A program made the position numbers and the translations under genes. The notes below the pieces were generated by a model. It saw only the letters and a list, made by a program, of their open reading frames with translations, did not search any database and was not told where the DNA came from. A stretch of DNA of 64,000 nucleotides, taken from the NCBI GenBank assembly GCA_021613535.1, contig CP075497.1, positions 3,658,001 through 3,722,000 on the forward strand, in the 5' to 3' direction. Numbering within the stretch: position 1 is the stretch's first letter; every line of letters begins with the position of its first letter. This document shows positions 21,732 through 30,082 of the stretch, piece by piece. The DNA is from Adineta vaga. Taxonomy: Eukaryota > Animalia > Rotifera.

Positions 21732-22506
21732 ATGCGTCTCGAACCTTGTTATTATTGTTCATCGACGATATGGCCCGGTCATGGTATTCAATTTGTACGA
21801 AATGATTGCAAAGTAAACAGTAGTAGTTTTTCCGATCTCAGTTGAAAAAAAAAGAGAATGTTTTCTAGATCTTTCGATTTTGTCGATCACGTTGTCATCG
21901 TGCATTTAAAAAGAAATGGAATCCACGAAAATCACGTTGGACAAAAGCACATCGAAAATTTACAGGCAAAGATTTAACTACAGATTCAACATTCGAATTT
22001 GAAAAACGTCGAAATGAACCAGTGAAATATAGCCGTGAATTATGGCAAGATACTGGTAGGAGAAGAAACTTTTCTATGAAATAGAAAGATAAAATTTGAT
22101 TTTTCTCATTGTATTTAGTCAAAGCTATGGAAAAAATTGGAGAAATTCGAACGAAACGTGAACGACATCATATTATGAAACGGTAAAAATCTTGTTTGTA
22201 TTTAAAGAATAATTTCAAAGGATTGATTTTGCTAGTCTTCGACAAGGTACACTCGATCGAAAAGCAGCTGATTTACGTGAAGTACGTGATTATATTCATC
22301 TTGTTCGTGCACCCAATGCTACAAAACCAATGGAAGAAATCGAAATGGTTCAAAAAGCAATGGCTAAACGTGATGAAGCTGGTGAACTTTTGACAAAAAT
22401 TGGTACAACTGTATCGACAACGAAGAAACTCAGTGCATTACGTCGTCGTGCACCTAAAATCGAAGTGACAATGGAAACATCAGATGCGGAACAAGCAATG
22501 GAATAA
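21732..22506 (+). CDS. RSL24D1: Ribosome biogenesis protein RLP24 (L24e-like), 4 exons
   Basis: [27 protein letters not shown]|[30 protein letters not shown]...[21 protein letters not shown] at 22504-22506. Confidence 0.93.
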
Positions 22507-22697
22507 TTTCATTCTTTTTTCATTTGTTTTGTTAATTTGTTTGTTATTCTTTATGTAAAATAAAGATGAATAAAATTTCCGTGTAACGATGTTCATAGAA
22601 AAACAAAAAAACTCCTTCCACCATCTCTTTCGATGTGATCTGTTTTGATTTTGTTTGTTTAATTTTTTCTTTCTAATTATTCTATTAAAGATGATCT

Positions 22698-22946
22698 ATG
22701 CCTGCTGGTCGTTCTAAACTTGTACAAGACGTTCTCCGTCTATATGCTGAATATATGCGTTTAAGTCGACAAGTACAAGGTTTAAAAGATATTGCACGTT
22801 CTGAATTTAAACAAAATAAAAATTTAAAAACCAAAGATAATTTAATTTATATTGAATATCTTATTCGTCGAGGAAAATCTCAATTAAATACATTAAAAGG
22901 TCAAGGTGTTAAAGCGATTAGTTTCTCAACTAAACAATCGCAATAA
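22698..22946 (+). CDS. SDHAF1: Succinate dehydrogenase assembly factor 1 (LYR-motif protein), intronless
   Basis: RSKLVQDVLRLYAEYMR...ARSEFKQN...IEYLIRRGKSQL aligns with SDHAF1 (SRLQRQVLSLYR...RAEFRQH...IEYLYRRGRRQL). Confidence 0.85.
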   Translation: MPAGRSKLVQDVLRLYAEYMRLSRQVQGLKDIARSEFKQNKNLKTKDNLIYIEYLIRRGKSQLNTLKGQGVKAISFSTKQSQ

Positions 22947-24026
22947 TGTCCGAATTTTCATCTGAATTATTAAACAATTTCCCTACAACTTATACAACAA
23001 ATGGTATCGGTGAACAAGCACAGATTTCATTTGCATTTGGTTATGGTTCAGGTGTTTTAAAACAACAACAAGACATAAAGAAAACAGCGAATCAAAATCA
23101 AGTTGATCTGATCTTAACTGTAAATAATTCATTTAGATTTCATGAAGAAAATCTAAAATTAAATCCACTTCATTATTCATTTTTACGACATTTCGGTCCA
23201 TCAACTATTACACGTGTACAAGAAACCAAAGGCGCAAGAATTTATTTTAATCCTTATATTAAATTTAATAATGATAATAATACATTATATAAATATGGAA
23301 TTATTTCACGAAAACATTTAATTCGAGATTTACTCGATTGGGAAACATTGTATGTTGCTGGTCGTTTGCAGGTAATTGAGTTTACAATACATAGTTGTTC
23401 AAATAAATTTGATTGTGTTTTAGAAACCTGTTCGTGTTATTCATATTGATGAAAATGATCAAGATTTAATCTATGCACTTCGAACAAATCTAAGTAGTGC
23501 ATTACATGTTGCTCTTCTTCTTTTACCTGAAGAATTTACATTAAAAGATTTATTTTTAAAAATAACTTCACTTTCCTATCAAGGTGATTTTCGAATGATT
23601 ATTGGTGAAAATAAAAACAAGATTTCCAACATTGTTCTACCACAAATCGATCTTTTCATTGAACAATATTCAAATTTAATAACAACTGATTCATATTTAC
23701 ATTGGAATAAGATTCGAACAGCAGATACAATTGTTAAACAAGATGTAACACCAACAGCTATTTTCAAACGTTTACTTGGCTTACCCAAATATGTTATTTA
23801 TAATATTATGGAATCAACAAAATTCAAAACACGACAATATCAAGATACAGAAGAAGTTATTCGAAAGTTGTGTGTAAGCACACAACGAACTGAGAAGATT
23901 GAAAGTGCTGTTCGATCTATTGTAAAAAGATCGAGTTTAACACAAACATGTAAAGGTTTAGTAACAGCCGGTTTTCTACGTAGTACACGTTATGCTTTAG
24001 AAAAATTAAAGAAAATGATTCGATAG
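22946..24026 (+). CDS. TAMM41: Mitochondrial phosphatidate cytidylyltransferase Tam41, 2 exons (intron 23372-23423)
   Basis: FAFGYGSGV, NPLHYSFL, GARIYFNPYI, KYGII, DLLDWETLYVAGRLQ|KPV, LSYQGDFRMIIGENKNKISNIV and SSLTQTCKGLVTAG. Confidence 0.95.
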
Positions 24027-24103
24027 ATTTGTCTTTCCTTTTTTCATATTTTTTGCGTTTGATTTTCAAAAACAAAATACAAAAGAAATCTTCTATATTC
24101 TAG

Positions 24104-25222
24104 ATGAAGATTGCTGTTGTCGGTTTAGGTGGAACAGGTAGTGCTGCTCTTCGTTTTCTTGCTCAAGCTGGTCATCAAGCAATTGGCTATGAACAATTTC
24201 ATATTGGTCATGAGAATGGAAGTTCACATGGTGAATCACGAATCATTCGATATACGTATCCCGATCTATTATTTACTCAAATGATGGCTGATTCTTATGC
24301 ATTATGGTTTGATCTTGAAAAAGAAGCAGGTGAAGAATTATTCGTTAAATGTGGTGGACTCTATTTCGGTGATAAAGATGATCCAGAAATTGCAAAAACA
24401 GAACAAGCTTTAATTGATACTAATCTACCGTATGAACGACTAACTGCTGAACAAACTCGCGAAAAATATCCGGCATTTCATCTGCGATCTAATGAAGTAG
24501 CTATTTATCAAAAAGACAGTGGATTTTTACGTGCATCTCGATGTGTACAAGCAAATATTCGTCTAGCTAAAAAACATGGTGCTATTGTTCATGAAAATAC
24601 AAAAATTCTCGAAGTTTTGACAAAAGATAATCAAACATTTGTTCGATCATCGCTTGGTGAAGAAGAATTTGATCGTGTTATTGTAACTGCTGGTCCTTGG
24701 ATGGGTACATTAATGAAACATTTGAATTTACCATTGAGACCAACTCGACAACAGATTACCTATTTAAATATCAATAATCATCCAGAGTATTTTCAACCTA
24801 ATGGAATTTTTCCTGTTTGGATTGATTCAACCGAAAATCTTTATGGTTTTCCAAGTGATGGACAAATAACTGGCGTTAAACTAGCGTATCATCATCCAGG
24901 AGAATTGATCACTGATTTAGATGCTGAACGTGCTCCCGTTGATGAAAATTATATTGAAGAAATTCGAGCTTATGCAAGAAAACGTTTTCCAAATTTAGAT
25001 TCCCAAGTGACTTATAGTCAAACATGTGTGTATACAAATACACAGAATGGAGATTTTATTATTGATCGTGTATCAAATGAATCGAATGCATTTTTAGTTA
25101 GTGGTTGTTCTGGTCATGGATTTAAGTTTACAATTTTATTGGGAAAAATAATTTCAATGATGTCGACTGACGATCATGGATATAAACGAGACCTTACACG
25201 ATTTAAAATTAGTAGTTTTTGA
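24104..25222 (+). CDS. Monomeric sarcosine oxidase / N-methyl-L-tryptophan oxidase (SolA/MSOX/PIPOX family) flavoprotein, intronless, bacterial-like
   Basis: GLGGTG Rossmann motif, GSSHGESRIIRYTY, VIVTAGPW, the covalent-FAD cysteine in TCVYTNT, and SGCSGHGFKF. Confidence 0.9.
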   Translation: MKIAVVGLGGTGSAALRFLAQAGHQAIGYEQFHIGHENGSSHGESRIIRYTYPDLLFTQMMADSYALWFDLEKEAGEELFVKCGGLYFGDKDDPEIAKTEQALIDTNLPYERLTAEQTREKYPAFHLRSNEVAIYQKDSGFLRASRCVQANIRLAKKHGAIVHENTKILEVLTKDNQTFVRSSLGEEEFDRVIVTAGPWMGTLMKHLNLPLRPTRQQITYLNINNHPEYFQPNGIFPVWIDSTENLYGFPSDGQITGVKLAYHHPGELITDLDAERAPVDENYIEEIRAYARKRFPNLDSQVTYSQTCVYTNTQNGDFIIDRVSNESNAFLVSGCSGHGFKFTILLGKIISMMSTDDHGYKRDLTRFKISSF

Positions 25223-27730: not shown

Positions 27731-28186
27731 TACGACCATGATATCATATGATCTAATGTGTTTTTGATCTTCTTGTTTTGTTCGATTGAGTTCAATGTCG
27801 TTTTTTTTTATCATAACATATGACGAAGACACAAACTAGGAAAGTCAATAGAAGAAATATGTTGTTTTCAACAAAATGACATTGATTTTAAATGAGTATC
27901 ATTATATAGATAGGAAGATAAACAGATACAGTCATTATCAGCTAATTGTCGTAATAACTATGTATTTTGTAAAATATATTGTTATGTTCAATTCGAAATG
28001 AGTATTTTATTGGAATATATTTTCAATTCTTAAAAAAATGTCACAATACTGAAGCATCAATGATTAAGCGAGGAAAAAACTAAATAAATAACTACAGACA
28101 ATGAAAAACATAATGATATTTAAATTTTTCAATGGATTTAGACTATAACCGGGCAAGGTATAGGTGACATTTTTTAGAATATGTAT

Positions 28187-29991
28187 TTATAAACCTTGTT
28201 GGTAGAATCGAGCAAATTCGGTACGATCAATACGTCCATCTTGATTAGCATCAGCATTGCGGAAAGCAGCACCAATAACATCAAATCCACCGGCACCACC
28301 AGCGGCAGCACCACCACTACCGAATGAACTCGATTCATATGATGATGATGATGATTGGAATCCACCAGCACCACCAGCAGCGAATCCAGCTTCACCACCA
28401 AATCCACCAGCAGCAAATCCTGCTTCACCACCAAATCCACCAGCAGCAAATCCGGCTTCACCTCCAAATCCACCAGTGCTTGATGAAAAGTTTGATGATT
28501 CATAGGATGAAGATCCAGCAGCACCCTGAAAACCACCAGCAGCAAAACCGGCATTACCAGCACCAGCACTGAAGCCGTTGCTTTCGAAGCTTGATGATGA
28601 TGCATTGAGGCCACTTGATTCTTGACCGTAGGATGCGGCACCGAAACCAACAGCAGCACCACCACCGACAGATGGAGGTGACTAAATAGTTTTTAAGAAA
28701 AATCAGTTAGTTTTCAGTAATTTGAAAGATAAATAGACACTTACGATATCTTCGACAACACCAGCAGCACGAGCTTGTTGAAGAAGTGTGGCAGCATCAA
28801 GAAGTTGAGCACCATATTGTTGAAGATAAGCTTGTGGGTTTTGTTGAGTAACACCAAGTCGTTGAAATTGACGAACAATACGAACTTGTGTGGGTTCGTA
28901 TTGAATGATAACATTACGTGGACGAGCATATTGTTGAGCAGCAGCAGCACGTTGAACGATTGTTTTTCGTTTAGCTTGTGCTCCATATGGAACCCATCGC
29001 TCGATGATGATATCACCTAGAAAGAACGTAAATGATTGTGTATTAATCGAGAAATAATTTCAGTAAAAAAACTACATACGAGGACGAGGTGGAAGAGGTG
29101 GTAAACGTTCAATGACAACTGATCGTGGTGGAACAGGTAAAGCTGCTAAACGACGAATAACAGTTTGAGAAGCAATGGACGCAGGTGGTTGTGGTGGACG
29201 TTCACGAAGAACAAGTGGAGGTGGTTGAGGAAGAGCAGGAGCTTGTTGACGAATGCGAAGTGGAGCTGGAGCGGGTGGTTGAGGTGGGCGCACTTCTTTG
29301 ATGATGAGTGGCTACATAAAATGAAGATCAATGAAATTTTATTCCAATACTGATGAAAAAACTAATATAGACTGCTTACGCCTGGTGGTGGGATTGGTGG
29401 TGGTTGAAGGAATCGAACTTTAATGTTTTGTGTGTATGTTTGTACACCACCAATAGCTGGACGACGAATGATTTGTGGGTTTGGATCTTTGAAGAGACCT
29501 TGAGCATCGGTTGCATATGTTTGAACATTAGTTTGTGAATTAAATGATGATGAGGAACTATCAAATCCATTGCTTCCGAAACCAGCAGCACCAACACCAA
29601 CACCAGCACCAGCACCGAAACCATTTGATGATTGAAAGTTTGATGCTTCGTATGATGATGAAGAACCACCGAATCCAGAACTGACACCAGCAGCACCAGC
29701 TCCGAATCCACCGTTACCGAAGCCTGATGACGACTCATAACTTGATGAGCTACCATAGTTTCCACCGGCTACACCAGCACCTGCACCGTATCCAGCGCTG
29801 CCAAATGATGATGATGATTCGTAGGCTGATGAGCCACCGAAACCTCCAGCAGCACCACCAAAACCTCCAGCAGCACCACCGAAACCTCCGGCAGCACCAC
29901 CAGCCCAGTTATTGAATTCATTTCGATCGATGTTTCCATCGCGATTGGTATCAGCTTGATTGAAAATTGCTCGAGCAGCGTCGAAACTCAT
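28187..29991 (-). CDS. Gly/Ser-rich, Pro-rich protein with an EF-hand loop at each terminus, 4 exons
   Basis: N-terminal DTNRDGNIDRNE and C-terminal DANQDGRIDRTE EF-hand loops; GGAAGGF and GGEAGFAA repeats; SSYESSS repeats; central core PLIIKEVRPPQPPAPAPLRIRQQ...ERLPPLPPRPR|DIIIERWVPYG. Introns at ~29380-29314, ~29079-29017 and ~28744-28682. Confidence 0.85.
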
Positions 29992-30082
29992 GATTATACT
30001 TAATTAATAGTTATATCTAGCAGATGAGTGTCTAATCAAAACGATAACGATGAATGTAATTCTTATCTATCTTCCAACGCAC

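What the first reader, a model, noticed from the sequence alone, without database searches (positions are those of the whole stretch)
22698..24026. SDHAF1 and TAMM41 joined by a TAATG stop/start overlap: prokaryote-style coupling in a nuclear animal gene
Seen in the sequence: ...CAA TCG CAA TAA TG TCC..., where the last A of the SDHAF1 stop (22946) is the A of the TAMM41 ATG. Both ORFs look full length. There is no intergenic space for a promoter or polyA site, and the nearest AG (ATTAG near 22921) lacks a pyrimidine tract. Other ATGs lie upstream (22691 out of frame, 22698, and two inside SDHAF1), which makes plain leaky scanning less attractive. Established: UAAUG overlaps drive termination-reinitiation in some viruses and translational coupling in bacteria; both products are mitochondrial (complex II assembly; CDP-DAG supply for cardiolipin). 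Inference: a true bicistronic mRNA using termination-reinitiation, or a -1 frameshift producing an SDHAF1-TAMM41 fusion in which the basic SDHAF1 acts as the import signal. The TAMM41 start MSEFSSELL is acidic and does not look like a presequence.
Basis: partly seen in the sequence, partly recalled or inferred. Interest (0 to 1): 0.85.

Follow-up and report, generated by a model that had tools for sequence, protein, structure and literature searches.

The report
Rotifer mRNA encoding SDHAF1 and TAMM41
In the bdelloid rotifer Adineta vaga and all its relatives examined, one mature, spliced-leader-capped mRNA carries two full mitochondrial genes (SDHAF1, then TAMM41) whose stop and start codons touch or overlap, so the second protein must be made by an unusual translation route; this is real and conserved, but two-gene mRNAs are already known in other animals.

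Summary
In Adineta vaga, the SDHAF1 ORF (82 aa, 22698-22946) ends in TAA whose last A starts the TAMM41 ATG (22946). DNA and RNA contigs show no indel.

RNA contigs from three studies start at the spliced-leader acceptor (AG 22689-90), cross the TAATG and have the TAMM41 intron removed. In two other bdelloid lineages, single 1.1-1.4 kb transcript contigs hold leader, SDHAF1, junction and spliced TAMM41. This is a true bicistronic mature mRNA.

The junction stays tight across 13 bdelloid lineages, including Didymodactylos: UAAUG, AUGA, or a 2-3 nt spacer.

A new feature is a conserved 5-13 codon uORF. It begins at the first base after the leader and overlaps the poorly placed SDHAF1 AUG out of frame. 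The TAMM41 AUG has A at -3 in 12 of the 13.

Best reading: ribosomes reach TAMM41 by skipping SDHAF1 (uORF reinitiation, leaky scanning), with termination-reinitiation at the junction adding to this. The split between routes is untested.

The frameshift-fusion idea is rejected: the TAMM41 frame is closed 1-12 codons upstream of its AUG in 11 of 12 lineages.

A second pair, SDHAF3-GK5, has the same build in this genome; the scan had noted it on another contig.

This is a new variant of a known kind.

The parts
22689..22690 (+). Spliced-leader trans-splice acceptor AG (pyrimidine-rich tract, then ...ttctattaaAG); the mature mRNA begins at 22691
   Evidence: RNA contigs of X1, X13 and X14 start at 22689. 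X13 shows the loose letters CTTACCAAG before it. Together with AG this is the 3' end of the rotifer leader GGCTTATTACAACTTACCAAGAG (PMC3795323). The genome holds 59 copies of that leader sequence.
22691..22717 (+). uORF of 8 codons (MIYACWSF, stop TAA 22715-17) that starts at the first base after the leader and overlaps the SDHAF1 AUG out of frame
   Evidence: The AG|ATGAT... start is conserved in all 13 lineages. The uORF is always 5-13 codons long and always overlaps the SDHAF1 AUG. It is present in transcript contigs L027, L030, L032 and L013.
22698..22946 (+). SDHAF1 ORF (82 aa, LYR family); its AUG has a poor context (U at -3, C at +4)
   Evidence: Pfam Complex1_LYR 24.6 bits. The nearest named Atlas clusters are SDHAF1. 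It is the only copy in the genome. dN/dS against relatives is 0.13-0.54.
22744..22757 (+). Two internal AUGs of SDHAF1: 22744 (frame +1, 6-codon ORF) and 22755 (in-frame Met20), both with U at -3
22931..22933 (+). TAA in the TAMM41 reading frame, 4 codons upstream of its AUG; this closes the frame to any fusion
22944..22948 (+). TAATG stop-start overlap (SDHAF1 TAA, TAMM41 ATG)
   Evidence: The sequence is unchanged in the DNA and RNA runs. Relatives have UAAUG, AUGA, UAA+2 nt+AUG or UAA+3 nt+AUG.
22946..23371 (+). TAMM41 exon 1 (142 codons); its AUG has A at -3
   Evidence: Pfam Tam41_Mmp37 5e-44; AUG context.
23372..23423 (+). 52-nt GT..AG intron of TAMM41
   Evidence: The joint 23369/23422 (cut +2) is present in all three RNA runs and absent from the DNA run X11 (table 5).
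23424..24026 (+). TAMM41 exon 2 (200 codons plus stop)
   Evidence: Pfam Tam41_Mmp37 6e-50. 100% identical to the A. vaga protein I4U23_028405.
24027..24088 (+). 3' UTR. RNA contigs end at about 24086-24088, some 15 nt before the next gene's acceptor AG (24102-03) and its ATG (24104)
   Evidence: table 8. Contig ends are only an approximate guide to the RNA end.

Best explanation
Shown: the locus makes one mature mRNA. It receives the 23-nt rotifer spliced leader at the AG of 22689-90, has the TAMM41 intron removed, and carries three ORFs in a row. These are an 8-codon uORF starting at the first base after the leader, SDHAF1 (82 aa), and TAMM41 (342 aa), whose AUG shares one base with the SDHAF1 stop. 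Both proteins are single-copy genes, so both must be translated from this RNA. Inferred: most ribosomes that translate TAMM41 have skipped SDHAF1. The uAUG sits where ordinary leader-adjacent start codons sit (GAG AUG A, purine at -3), and its short ORF runs over the SDHAF1 AUG. Ribosomes that use it cannot start SDHAF1. They terminate 20 nt further on, resume scanning, and are ready to start again about 230 nt later at the TAMM41 AUG (A at -3). Ribosomes that leak past the uAUG meet the SDHAF1 AUG and two internal AUGs, all with U at -3. A minority therefore make SDHAF1 and the rest scan on to TAMM41. Ribosomes that did translate SDHAF1 end on UAAUG, and some probably restart there (termination-reinitiation). 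That would explain why stop and start have been held within -4 to +3 nt across the whole class. The share of each route is not known.
For: Bicistronic mRNA:
- in X1, X13 and X14 (three studies), one contig runs from 22839 to 24018-24088 across the TAATG with the intron spliced out. The 5' contigs begin at 22689 with leader letters. There is no contig break or indel at the junction.
- seven contigs were shown, of nine samples in one RNA-seq series from another bdelloid. Each 1.1-1.27 kb contig joins the uORF, SDHAF1 (84 aa), an AUGA overlap and at least 284 (up to 332) open codons of spliced TAMM41; three of them (L027, L030, L032) also keep a recognisable part of the leader.
- L013 is a full-length 1361-nt transcript contig with the same content.
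- leader identity and leader genes.

Both ORFs are functional and unique.

Bypass design:
- The uAUG, always out of frame with SDHAF1, is conserved in 13 of 13 lineages, and the uORF is 5-13 codons long.
- The SDHAF1 AUG has U at -3 in all lineages.
- The TAMM41 AUG has A at -3 in 12 of 13.
- Every other upstream AUG opens an ORF of at most 11 codons that ends well before the TAMM41 AUG.
- The same uORF-over-first-AUG build recurs at SDHAF3-GK5 in A. vaga and in L040.

Junction constraint: four different junction forms exist, none with a spacer over 3 nt. This holds despite dS of 0.3-1.1 and a freely varying SDHAF1 tail of 82-85 aa.

Precedent: Drosophila sloth1/sloth2 have a 5-nt spacer and a weak first Kozak, and leaky scanning was shown by reporters (PMC9681215).
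Against: There are no translation data of any kind (ribosome profiling, reporters or proteomics). All RNA evidence is from de Bruijn contigs. These drop rare isoforms and cannot show molecule ends, so a minor monocistronic TAMM41 mRNA is not excluded. In A. vaga itself a heterozygous bubble (22745-22868) breaks the contigs, so leader-to-TAMM41 continuity rests on overlapping pieces. Out-of-frame AUGs in SDHAF1 are not clearly depleted against synonymous shuffles (20 observed, 23.4 expected, P about 0.05). In some lineages an extra AUG at +31 has a purine at -3. Context strength is judged by the general eukaryotic rule, not by a rotifer-specific measurement. If bypass alone fed TAMM41, nothing would require the stop to stay next to the start. 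Conversely, SDHAF3-GK5 tolerates a 17-nt spacer in one relative.
Confidence: 0.5

Rival explanations
1. Same bicistronic mRNA, but TAMM41 is made mainly by termination-reinitiation. Ribosomes finish SDHAF1 at UAA, the 40S subunit stays on the RNA, and it restarts on the overlapping or adjacent AUG, as on UAAUG/AUGA junctions of caliciviruses, influenza B segment 7, hypovirus CHV1 and the SART1 retrotransposon.
For: Stop and start stay within -4 to +3 nt in all 13 lineages through four different junction forms, while the SDHAF1 tail varies in sequence and length. UAAUG and AUGA are the classical junctions of this mechanism (PMC10275272; PMC2699510). The restart AUG has a good context.
Against: There is no UGGGA/TURBS-like motif within 120 nt upstream in any lineage, and no structure beyond shuffled controls (z = -0.2). 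SDHAF1 has a poor AUG placed behind a well-placed uAUG, so few ribosomes should finish it. Viral restart efficiencies are only 3-20% even with a TURBS. The sister pair SDHAF3-GK5 has a 17-nt spacer in one relative. Drosophila sloth1/2 keep a 5-nt spacer yet use leaky scanning.
Confidence: 0.3
2. The bicistronic RNA exists, but most TAMM41 protein comes from a separate monocistronic mRNA. That mRNA would be made by leader trans-splicing at, or transcription from, a site inside the SDHAF1 ORF, and contig data would miss it.
For: Bdelloids trans-splice. Logan contigs clip low-coverage tips, so a minor leader branch could be lost (limits stated). AG dinucleotides lie 24-46 nt upstream of the AUG in A. 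vaga.
Against: There is no contig break between 22839 and the 3' end in three RNA studies, whereas the branch at 22689 does break the contigs of X1. All nine contigs carrying SDHAF1 in the second species continue into TAMM41. No AG is positionally conserved: Didymodactylos has none within 54 nt and Rotaria socialis none within 39 nt. None follows a pyrimidine tract. Contig depths are similar over both ORFs (weak evidence).
Confidence: 0.1
3. Cap-independent internal entry: an IRES-like element within the SDHAF1 coding region recruits ribosomes directly to the TAMM41 AUG.
For: FlyBase curators suggest IRES use may be common among Drosophila dicistronic pairs (PMC4528330). The region is A/U-rich and unstructured.
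Against: There is no stable or conserved structure, and no sequence conservation beyond the coding constraint in the last 90 nt. This route would not explain the conserved uORF or the stop-start proximity.
Confidence: 0.05
4. A -1 frameshift (or stop readthrough) makes an SDHAF1-TAMM41 fusion in which SDHAF1 serves as the import signal.
For: TAMM41 is in the -1 frame relative to SDHAF1 in 11 of 13 lineages. Its first 24 residues hold three acidic and no basic residues.
Against: The TAMM41 frame is closed by a stop 1-12 codons upstream of the AUG in 11 of 12 lineages, and by only 1 codon in Rotaria socialis, L012 and L010. There is no slippery heptamer in that window. The frame relation is 0 in L010/L014. 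No LYR-TAMM41 fusion occurs among the best 150 TAMM41 representatives. A short N-terminus is the commonest state in the family: 67 of 121.
Confidence: 0.02
5. Assembly or annotation artefact: an indel at the junction hides a spacer or an in-frame fusion.
For: None found.
Against: One DNA run and three RNA runs from four studies show the same letters with no insertions or deletions (tables 3 and 4). The same arrangement appears in independent assemblies of A. ricciae, five Rotaria socialis genomes, Didymodactylos carnosus and metagenome contigs.
Confidence: 0.01

Closest known systems
Drosophila dicistronic mRNAs, in particular sloth1/sloth2 (PMC9681215; FlyBase lists 159 dicistronic pairs, PMC4528330)
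   Same: A mature animal mRNA carries two conserved ORFs for mitochondrial proteins. The first ORF is about 80 aa with a poor start context and the second has a good one. Only a few nucleotides separate stop and start (5 nt in sloth).
   Different: Here the mRNA is leader-trans-spliced, the second ORF is a 342-aa enzyme rather than a paralogous peptide, and the ORFs overlap (UAAUG/AUGA). A conserved uORF also overlaps the first AUG. No reporter test has been done.
Termination-reinitiation after long ORFs: calicivirus VP1/VP2, influenza B M1/BM2, hypovirus CHV1 ORF A/B, SART1 retrotransposon (PMC10275272; PMC2793014; PMC2699510)
   Same: The same junctions (UAAUG, AUGA), out-of-frame ORFs, a restart AUG within a few nucleotides of the stop, and two functional products at a fixed ratio.
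   Different: This is a cellular housekeeping mRNA. No TURBS motif or upstream structure was found, and the upstream ORF looks weakly translated. The mechanism was not tested.
Delayed reinitiation after short uORFs, with a uORF overlapping a main AUG (GCN4/ATF4 type; general knowledge, reviewed in PMC5972666)
   Same: A short uORF overlaps a downstream AUG out of frame and diverts ribosomes past it to a more distal AUG.
   Different: In ATF4 the overlapped ORF is the regulated product and the uORF is inhibitory. Here the overlapped ORF is one of two wanted products, and the uORF would set their ratio. Stress control is unknown.
Leader-resolved operons of nematodes, tunicates and chaetognaths (PMC1657053; PMC12460157)
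   Same: A co-directional, tightly packed gene cluster with leader acceptors directly before start codons. The neighbours RPL24 and the DAO oxidase appear to be separate, leader-capped mRNAs.
   Different: The SDHAF1-TAMM41 pair is not resolved: there is no polyadenylation or trans-splicing between the two ORFs. As of 2021 a methods paper stated that operons and polycistronic mRNAs had not been reported in rotifers (PMC7986045).
MIEF1 upstream-ORF microprotein, an LYR-family protein encoded ahead of MIEF1 in vertebrates (PMC5703645 appeared in the search but was not read; the details are from my own knowledge)
   Same: A small LYR-motif mitochondrial protein is encoded as the upstream cistron of a larger mitochondrial protein's mRNA.
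   Different: A different LYR member and a different partner, no stop-start overlap, and a different phylum.
Polycistronic mRNAs of green algae (PMC7896298; only the abstract was seen. That the upstream ORFs have weak start contexts consistent with leaky scanning is from my own knowledge)
   Same: Conserved multi-ORF mature nuclear mRNAs.
   Different: Algae rather than animals, no spliced leader, and usually longer inter-ORF spacers.

Membership tests
Dicistronic mature mRNA of an animal nuclear gene pair | Both ORFs lie on one processed RNA molecule (cis-spliced, with its own 5' end upstream of ORF1 and no processing between the ORFs) | tested here: met
   contigs with the intron removed cross the junction, and the leader sits at 22689. 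and 69/70: single transcript contigs in two other lineages carry uORF, SDHAF1, junction and spliced TAMM41, and several also carry part of the leader. This is contig-level evidence, not single-molecule evidence.
Dicistronic mature mRNA of an animal nuclear gene pair | Both ORFs encode conserved, functional proteins | tested here: met
   Pfam and Atlas assignments. Both genes are single-copy in the genome. SDHAF1 dN/dS is 0.13-0.54. TAMM41 is 69-87% identical across named bdelloid species.
Dicistronic mature mRNA of an animal nuclear gene pair | Both proteins are actually translated from that mRNA | not testable with these tools
   No ribosome profiling or proteomics data were available. Translation is inferred because no other copy or transcript of either gene was found.
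Termination-reinitiation after a long ORF (scenario 2 of PMC10275272) | Stop of ORF1 and start of ORF2 lie within about 20 nt, often sharing bases (UAAUG, AUGA) | tested here: met
   The distance is -4 to +3 nt in 13 lineages.
Termination-reinitiation after a long ORF (scenario 2 of PMC10275272) | An upstream element that tethers the 40S subunit (TURBS with an 18S-complementary UGGGA, or a defined structure) | tested here: not met
   There is no TGGGA within 120 nt upstream in any lineage. The fold of 22850-22990 has z = -0.2. Other, unknown tethers are not excluded.
Termination-reinitiation after a long ORF (scenario 2 of PMC10275272) | ORF2 expression depends on translation and termination of ORF1 at that place | not testable with these tools
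   This needs reporters with the stop moved or the ORF1 AUG removed.
Leader-resolved operon (C. elegans type) | The downstream gene receives its own spliced leader, and the upstream gene is polyadenylated between the two | tested here: not met
   There is no room between the ORFs, no conserved acceptor, no contig break, and the transcript contigs are continuous.
Programmed -1 ribosomal frameshift fusion | A slippery heptamer plus an open -1 frame spanning the shift site | tested here: not met
   The TAMM41 frame is open for only 1-12 codons before the AUG in 11 of 12 lineages, and there is no slippery site.
SDHAF1 (LYRM8) family | An LYR-motif three-helix domain of about 80-115 aa with an SDHAF1-type IEYLxRRG block | tested here: met
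   Pfam Complex1_LYR over residues 10-64 at 24.6 bits, just under the 24.8 cut-off; relatives pass it. The top two named Atlas clusters are SDHAF1 at 0.90. The LYAEYMR and IEYLIRRG blocks are conserved in all lineages. No solved structure matched by sequence. Function was not tested.
TAMM41 / Tam41_Mmp37 (mitochondrial CDP-diacylglycerol synthase) | A full-length match to PF09139 | tested here: met
   The two exons cover profile positions 10-123 and 124-322 of 322.

The most novel reading that the evidence does not exclude
Bdelloid rotifers may use a reusable three-ORF cassette for small LYR assembly factors. A leader-adjacent uORF overlaps the first cistron's AUG and gates how many ribosomes make the small factor. 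The rest are passed to a second, larger cistron that starts at or next to the first one's stop. Genuine termination-reinitiation would occur at UAAUG/AUGA without any viral-type TURBS element. The cassette is found at two independent pairs (SDHAF1-TAMM41 and SDHAF3-GK5). If confirmed, it would be the first conserved cellular case in which stop-start coupling yields two essential proteins, and the first polycistronic mature mRNAs described in Rotifera.
Probability: 0.25. Interest if true: 0.8.

Novelty: new variant of a known kind. Interest (0 to 1): 0.6.

Why it matters
Animal mRNAs that make two full proteins are known, mainly from Drosophila. Natural cellular cases with overlapping stop and start codons, and with both products clearly needed, are scarce. 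A recent review states that the biological role of such cellular reinitiation products is undetermined and that the distance rules on eukaryotic mRNAs are unknown (PMC10275272).

This locus offers a compact natural test system:
- two single-copy housekeeping genes;
- a 23-nt leader;
- a conserved uORF;
- four natural junction variants (UAAUG, AUGA, +2 nt, +3 nt) across the class.

It also shows that within a leader-processed gene cluster, one pair is deliberately left unresolved. A 2021 methods paper stated that operons and polycistronic mRNAs had not been reported in rotifers.

There is a practical point as well. The SDHAF1 ORF is missing from the public annotation of A. ricciae, D. carnosus and four of five Rotaria socialis assemblies. 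Standard gene callers therefore lose such upstream cistrons and understate the mitochondrial assembly toolkit.

Tried and rejected
- **Homeologous copy.** DNA and protein searches of the whole assembly found only this locus, so no within-genome comparison was possible.
- **Frameshift fusion.** Rejected from the closed TAMM41 frame and the variable frame relation.
- **Natural LYR-TAMM41 fusions elsewhere.** An HMM built from 31 rotifer SDHAF1 proteins found nothing in the best 150 of 1465 TAMM41 representatives.
- **Linkage outside bdelloids.** The nearest non-rotifer TAMM41 loci (L016, L017, L022-24) have no LYR ORF upstream. Monogonont rotifers could not be identified in the collections, so the age of the arrangement beyond Bdelloidea is unknown.
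- **TURBS motif and RNA structure upstream of the junction.** None found.
- **AUG depletion in SDHAF1.** Tested as a mark of leaky scanning and not significant.
- **Solved-structure search for SDHAF1.** No true hit.
- **Exact leader plus GT in the genome.** No match, because the genomic copies start with T rather than G. With up to two mismatches allowed, 59 copies were found.
- **RNA contigs for Rotaria socialis TAMM41.** Only genome assemblies were returned.
- **Literature search for SDHAF1/TAMM41 bicistrons or bdelloid polycistrons.** Nothing specific.
- **Joined TAMM41 protein.** TAMM41 was searched exon by exon, by reference.
- **Other caps.** Read laying and the look-up of sequencing runs were used once each (their caps).
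Full report
**What is in the sequence**

The window comes from the 100.8-Mb, six-contig assembly of the bdelloid rotifer Adineta vaga. GC content is about 30%. The translation of TAMM41 exon 2 is 100% identical to the annotated 342-aa A. vaga protein I4U23_028405, and the two exons together give 342 aa.

- ORF1 (22698-22946, 82 aa) is an LYR-family protein. It scores 24.6 bits on Pfam Complex1_LYR against a 24.8 cut-off.
- Its nearest named clusters in the ESM Atlas are 'succinate dehydrogenase assembly factor 1'. Its LYAEYMR and IEYLIRRG blocks are conserved in all relatives.
- ORF2 is TAMM41, in two exons (22946-23371 and 23424-24026) separated by a 52-nt GT..AG intron. The two halves cover Pfam Tam41_Mmp37 positions 10-322.
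- The SDHAF1 stop TAA (22944-46) shares its last A with the TAMM41 ATG (22946-48).
- Neither gene has a second copy in the assembly, so there is no homeolog to compare.
- TAMM41 was searched exon by exon, by reference. The joined protein was not submitted to any tool.

**RNA evidence in A. vaga**

Contigs of four public runs from four studies were laid on 21900-24500.

- X11 keeps the intron and is therefore DNA. X1, X13 and X14 have the 52 nt removed and are therefore RNA.
- In each RNA run, one contig of 1.13-1.20 kb runs from 22839, inside SDHAF1, across the TAATG and the splice joint to 24018-24088.
- No run shows an inserted or deleted letter.
- The 5' pieces of all three RNA runs begin at 22689. 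In X13 the letters CTTACCAAG precede that position.
- Together with the AG of 22689-90, those letters are the 3' end of the rotifer spliced leader GGCTTATTACAACTTACCAAGAG (PMC3795323). The genome holds 59 copies of that leader sequence against 0 for the reversed control.
- The mature mRNA therefore starts with the leader joined to 22691.
- A heterozygous bubble (four SNPs, 22775-22838, both alleles in RNA) breaks the contigs. Leader-to-TAMM41 continuity in A. vaga thus rests on overlapping pieces.
- Where a branch exists, at 22689 in X1, the contigs do break. None breaks near the TAMM41 AUG.

**RNA evidence in other lineages**

An SDHAF1 relative (P0012) lies on nine Logan contigs from one RNA-seq series of another bdelloid. 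Seven were shown. Each is a single contig of 1.1-1.27 kb. Each consists of ATGATCT, the SDHAF1 ATG (84 aa), an AUGA overlap, and a TAMM41 ORF open for at least 284 (up to 332) codons that reads straight through ...YVAGRLQKPVRII..., so the intron is removed. Three of them (L027, L030, L032) also begin with a recognisable part of the leader, in L032 preceded by sequencing adapter.

L013, a 1361-nt JGI contig, is a full-length transcript. It has the leader part, uORF, SDHAF1 (84 aa), AUGA, a complete 343-codon spliced TAMM41 and a 3' UTR.

A processed bicistronic mRNA is therefore shown in three lineages.

**Conservation of the junction**

Loci were collected through SDHAF1 and TAMM41 relatives. 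They represent 13 lineages, among them A. ricciae, Rotaria socialis and Didymodactylos carnosus. My own knowledge, not a tool result, is that Didymodactylos branches deep within bdelloids.

Synteny is kept: M14 peptidase, RPL24, SDHAF1, TAMM41, DAO-type oxidase, DOLK.

| Junction form | Where found |
|---|---|
| UAAUG | 7 lineages |
| AUGA | 4 lineages |
| UAA + 2 nt + AUG | Didymodactylos |
| UAA AAC AUG (in frame) | L010/L014 |

- No lineage has a spacer above 3 nt or an overlap above 4 nt.
- This holds although synonymous divergence from A. vaga is 0.29-1.14.
- It also holds although the last 8-12 residues of SDHAF1 vary freely in sequence and length.
- The exact TAATG is therefore not conserved, but the proximity is.

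**The frameshift-fusion idea**

- In the TAMM41 frame a stop lies 4 codons upstream of the AUG in A. vaga.
- It lies 1 codon upstream in Rotaria socialis, L012 and L010, and 1-12 codons upstream in 11 of 12 lineages.
- No slippery heptamer lies in that window.
- The frame relation is not constant.
- None of the best 150 of 1465 TAMM41 representatives has an LYR domain.
- The acidic, short N-terminus is not unusual. Of 121 full-length-like representatives, 67 have N-termini no longer than the rotifer protein.
- The fusion reading is rejected.

The out-of-frame ATG at 22691 is the very first base after the leader.

- In the mRNA its context is ...AAGAG AUG A. This is the context of ordinary rotifer genes whose start codon directly follows the acceptor, such as the next gene at 24102-24106.
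- It opens an 8-codon ORF that runs over the SDHAF1 AUG and stops 20 nt past it.
- AG|ATGAT is invariant in all 13 lineages.
- The uORF is always out of frame with SDHAF1, always overlaps its AUG, and is always 5-13 codons long.
- The SDHAF1 AUG has U at -3 in every lineage, as do the internal AUGs at +46 and +57.
- The TAMM41 AUG has A at -3 in 12 of 13.
- Every other upstream AUG opens an ORF of at most 11 codons that ends long before the TAMM41 AUG.

By the general scanning rules (established knowledge), this is the layout expected if ribosomes are meant to pass SDHAF1. Those that take the uAUG cannot start SDHAF1. After a very short ORF they can resume scanning and restart about 230 nt later. 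Those that leak past the uAUG mostly leak past the weak AUGs too.

Drosophila sloth1/sloth2 is a tested precedent for the leaky-scanning part. It has a 5-nt spacer, a weak first Kozak, and reporters that confirm leaky scanning (PMC9681215).

**Termination-reinitiation**

UAAUG and AUGA are its classical junctions (PMC10275272). It is the one mechanism that predicts an upper bound on the spacer, which fits the conserved proximity.

Against it as the main route:
- There is no UGGGA/TURBS-like motif within 120 nt in any lineage.
- There is no structure above shuffled controls.
- The upstream ORF looks weakly initiated.

I therefore rank it as a contributor (0.3 as the main route) behind scanning-based bypass (0.5). 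A hidden monocistronic TAMM41 mRNA gets 0.1, internal entry 0.05, fusion 0.02 and artefact 0.01. None of the translation steps is shown. All are inferred from sequence layout and conservation.

**A second pair with the same build**

- I located it with Pfam PF13233.
- The two-exon SDHAF3 gene ends ...ACA AAA TAATG CCT..., where the ATG opens a glycerol kinase 5 / FGGY_N ORF.
- A short uORF again overlaps the SDHAF3 AUG out of frame.
- In a relative (L040), the same pair and the same kind of uORF are present, but stop and start are 17 nt apart.
- The build (uORF over the first AUG, small LYR factor, abutting larger gene) therefore recurs. In that pair, strict overlap is dispensable.

**Comparison with what is known**

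- Dicistronic mature mRNAs are well documented in Drosophila: 159 pairs, some with overlapping coding regions (PMC4528330). They are also documented in green algae (PMC7896298).
- In vertebrates, a small LYR protein is encoded by the MIEF1 upstream ORF. This detail is from my own knowledge; the papers found were not read.
- For rotifers, a 2021 paper states that operons and polycistronic mRNAs had not been reported (PMC7986045). My searches found no report of this pair or of bdelloid bicistrons.
- I file it as a new variant of a known kind: a leader-capped, unresolved dicistron with a conserved gating uORF and a stop-start junction held tight across a whole class.

**Limits**

- All RNA evidence is from assembled contigs. 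These cannot show molecule ends or rare isoforms.
- No translation data exist.
- Start-context strength is judged by the general eukaryotic rule.
- Monogonont and other non-bdelloid rotifers could not be examined.

Noticed in passing
L033 1446-2011 (G000 contig 2, about 6754926-6755491); relative L040 840-1503: SDHAF3 (LYR family, two exons) ends in a TAA that overlaps the ATG of a glycerol kinase 5 / FGGY gene (TAATG). A short uORF overlaps the SDHAF3 AUG out of frame. In relative L040 the pair and the uORF are kept, but stop and start are 17 nt apart.
   Followed up: partly
window 22235-22689: In RNA run X1, one contig runs from the last exon of the upstream RPL24 gene, through its AATAAA signals and the whole intergenic stretch, up to the SDHAF1 leader acceptor. 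This may be an unprocessed polycistronic precursor of an operon-like cluster (M14 peptidase, RPL24, SDHAF1-TAMM41, DAO oxidase, DOLK, all on the + strand).
   Followed up: no
window 24086-24106: TAMM41 RNA contigs end at about 24086-24088. The next gene's acceptor AG (24102-03) sits directly before its ATG (24104). That leaves only about 15 nt between one mRNA's end and the next mRNA's trans-splice site.
   Followed up: no
L025 2253-2501; L020 2241-2498; L046-L049 about 1253-1501: The SDHAF1 ORF is not annotated in the public records of Adineta ricciae, Didymodactylos carnosus and four of five Rotaria socialis assemblies, although it is intact there.
   Followed up: partly
L007 3001-3260: A low-coverage contig of another bdelloid carries a decayed copy. 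SDHAF1 has an internal deletion (72 aa), and only a short TAMM41 remnant follows the ATGA junction. It is probably a dying duplicate.
   Followed up: no
window 22775, 22800, 22810, 22838: Four heterozygous SNPs cluster inside SDHAF1. Two are synonymous; the others give S35A and K38R. Both alleles are present in the DNA run and in all three RNA runs.
   Followed up: partly
G000, e.g. contig 5 9884356-9925969; loci L050-L055: There are 59 copies of the spliced-leader sequence, with T instead of G at the first base. Many sit in divergent pairs about 154 bp apart and in clusters.
   Followed up: no
window 28001-30000: GC content jumps to 0.43 against a background of about 0.30.
   Followed up: no
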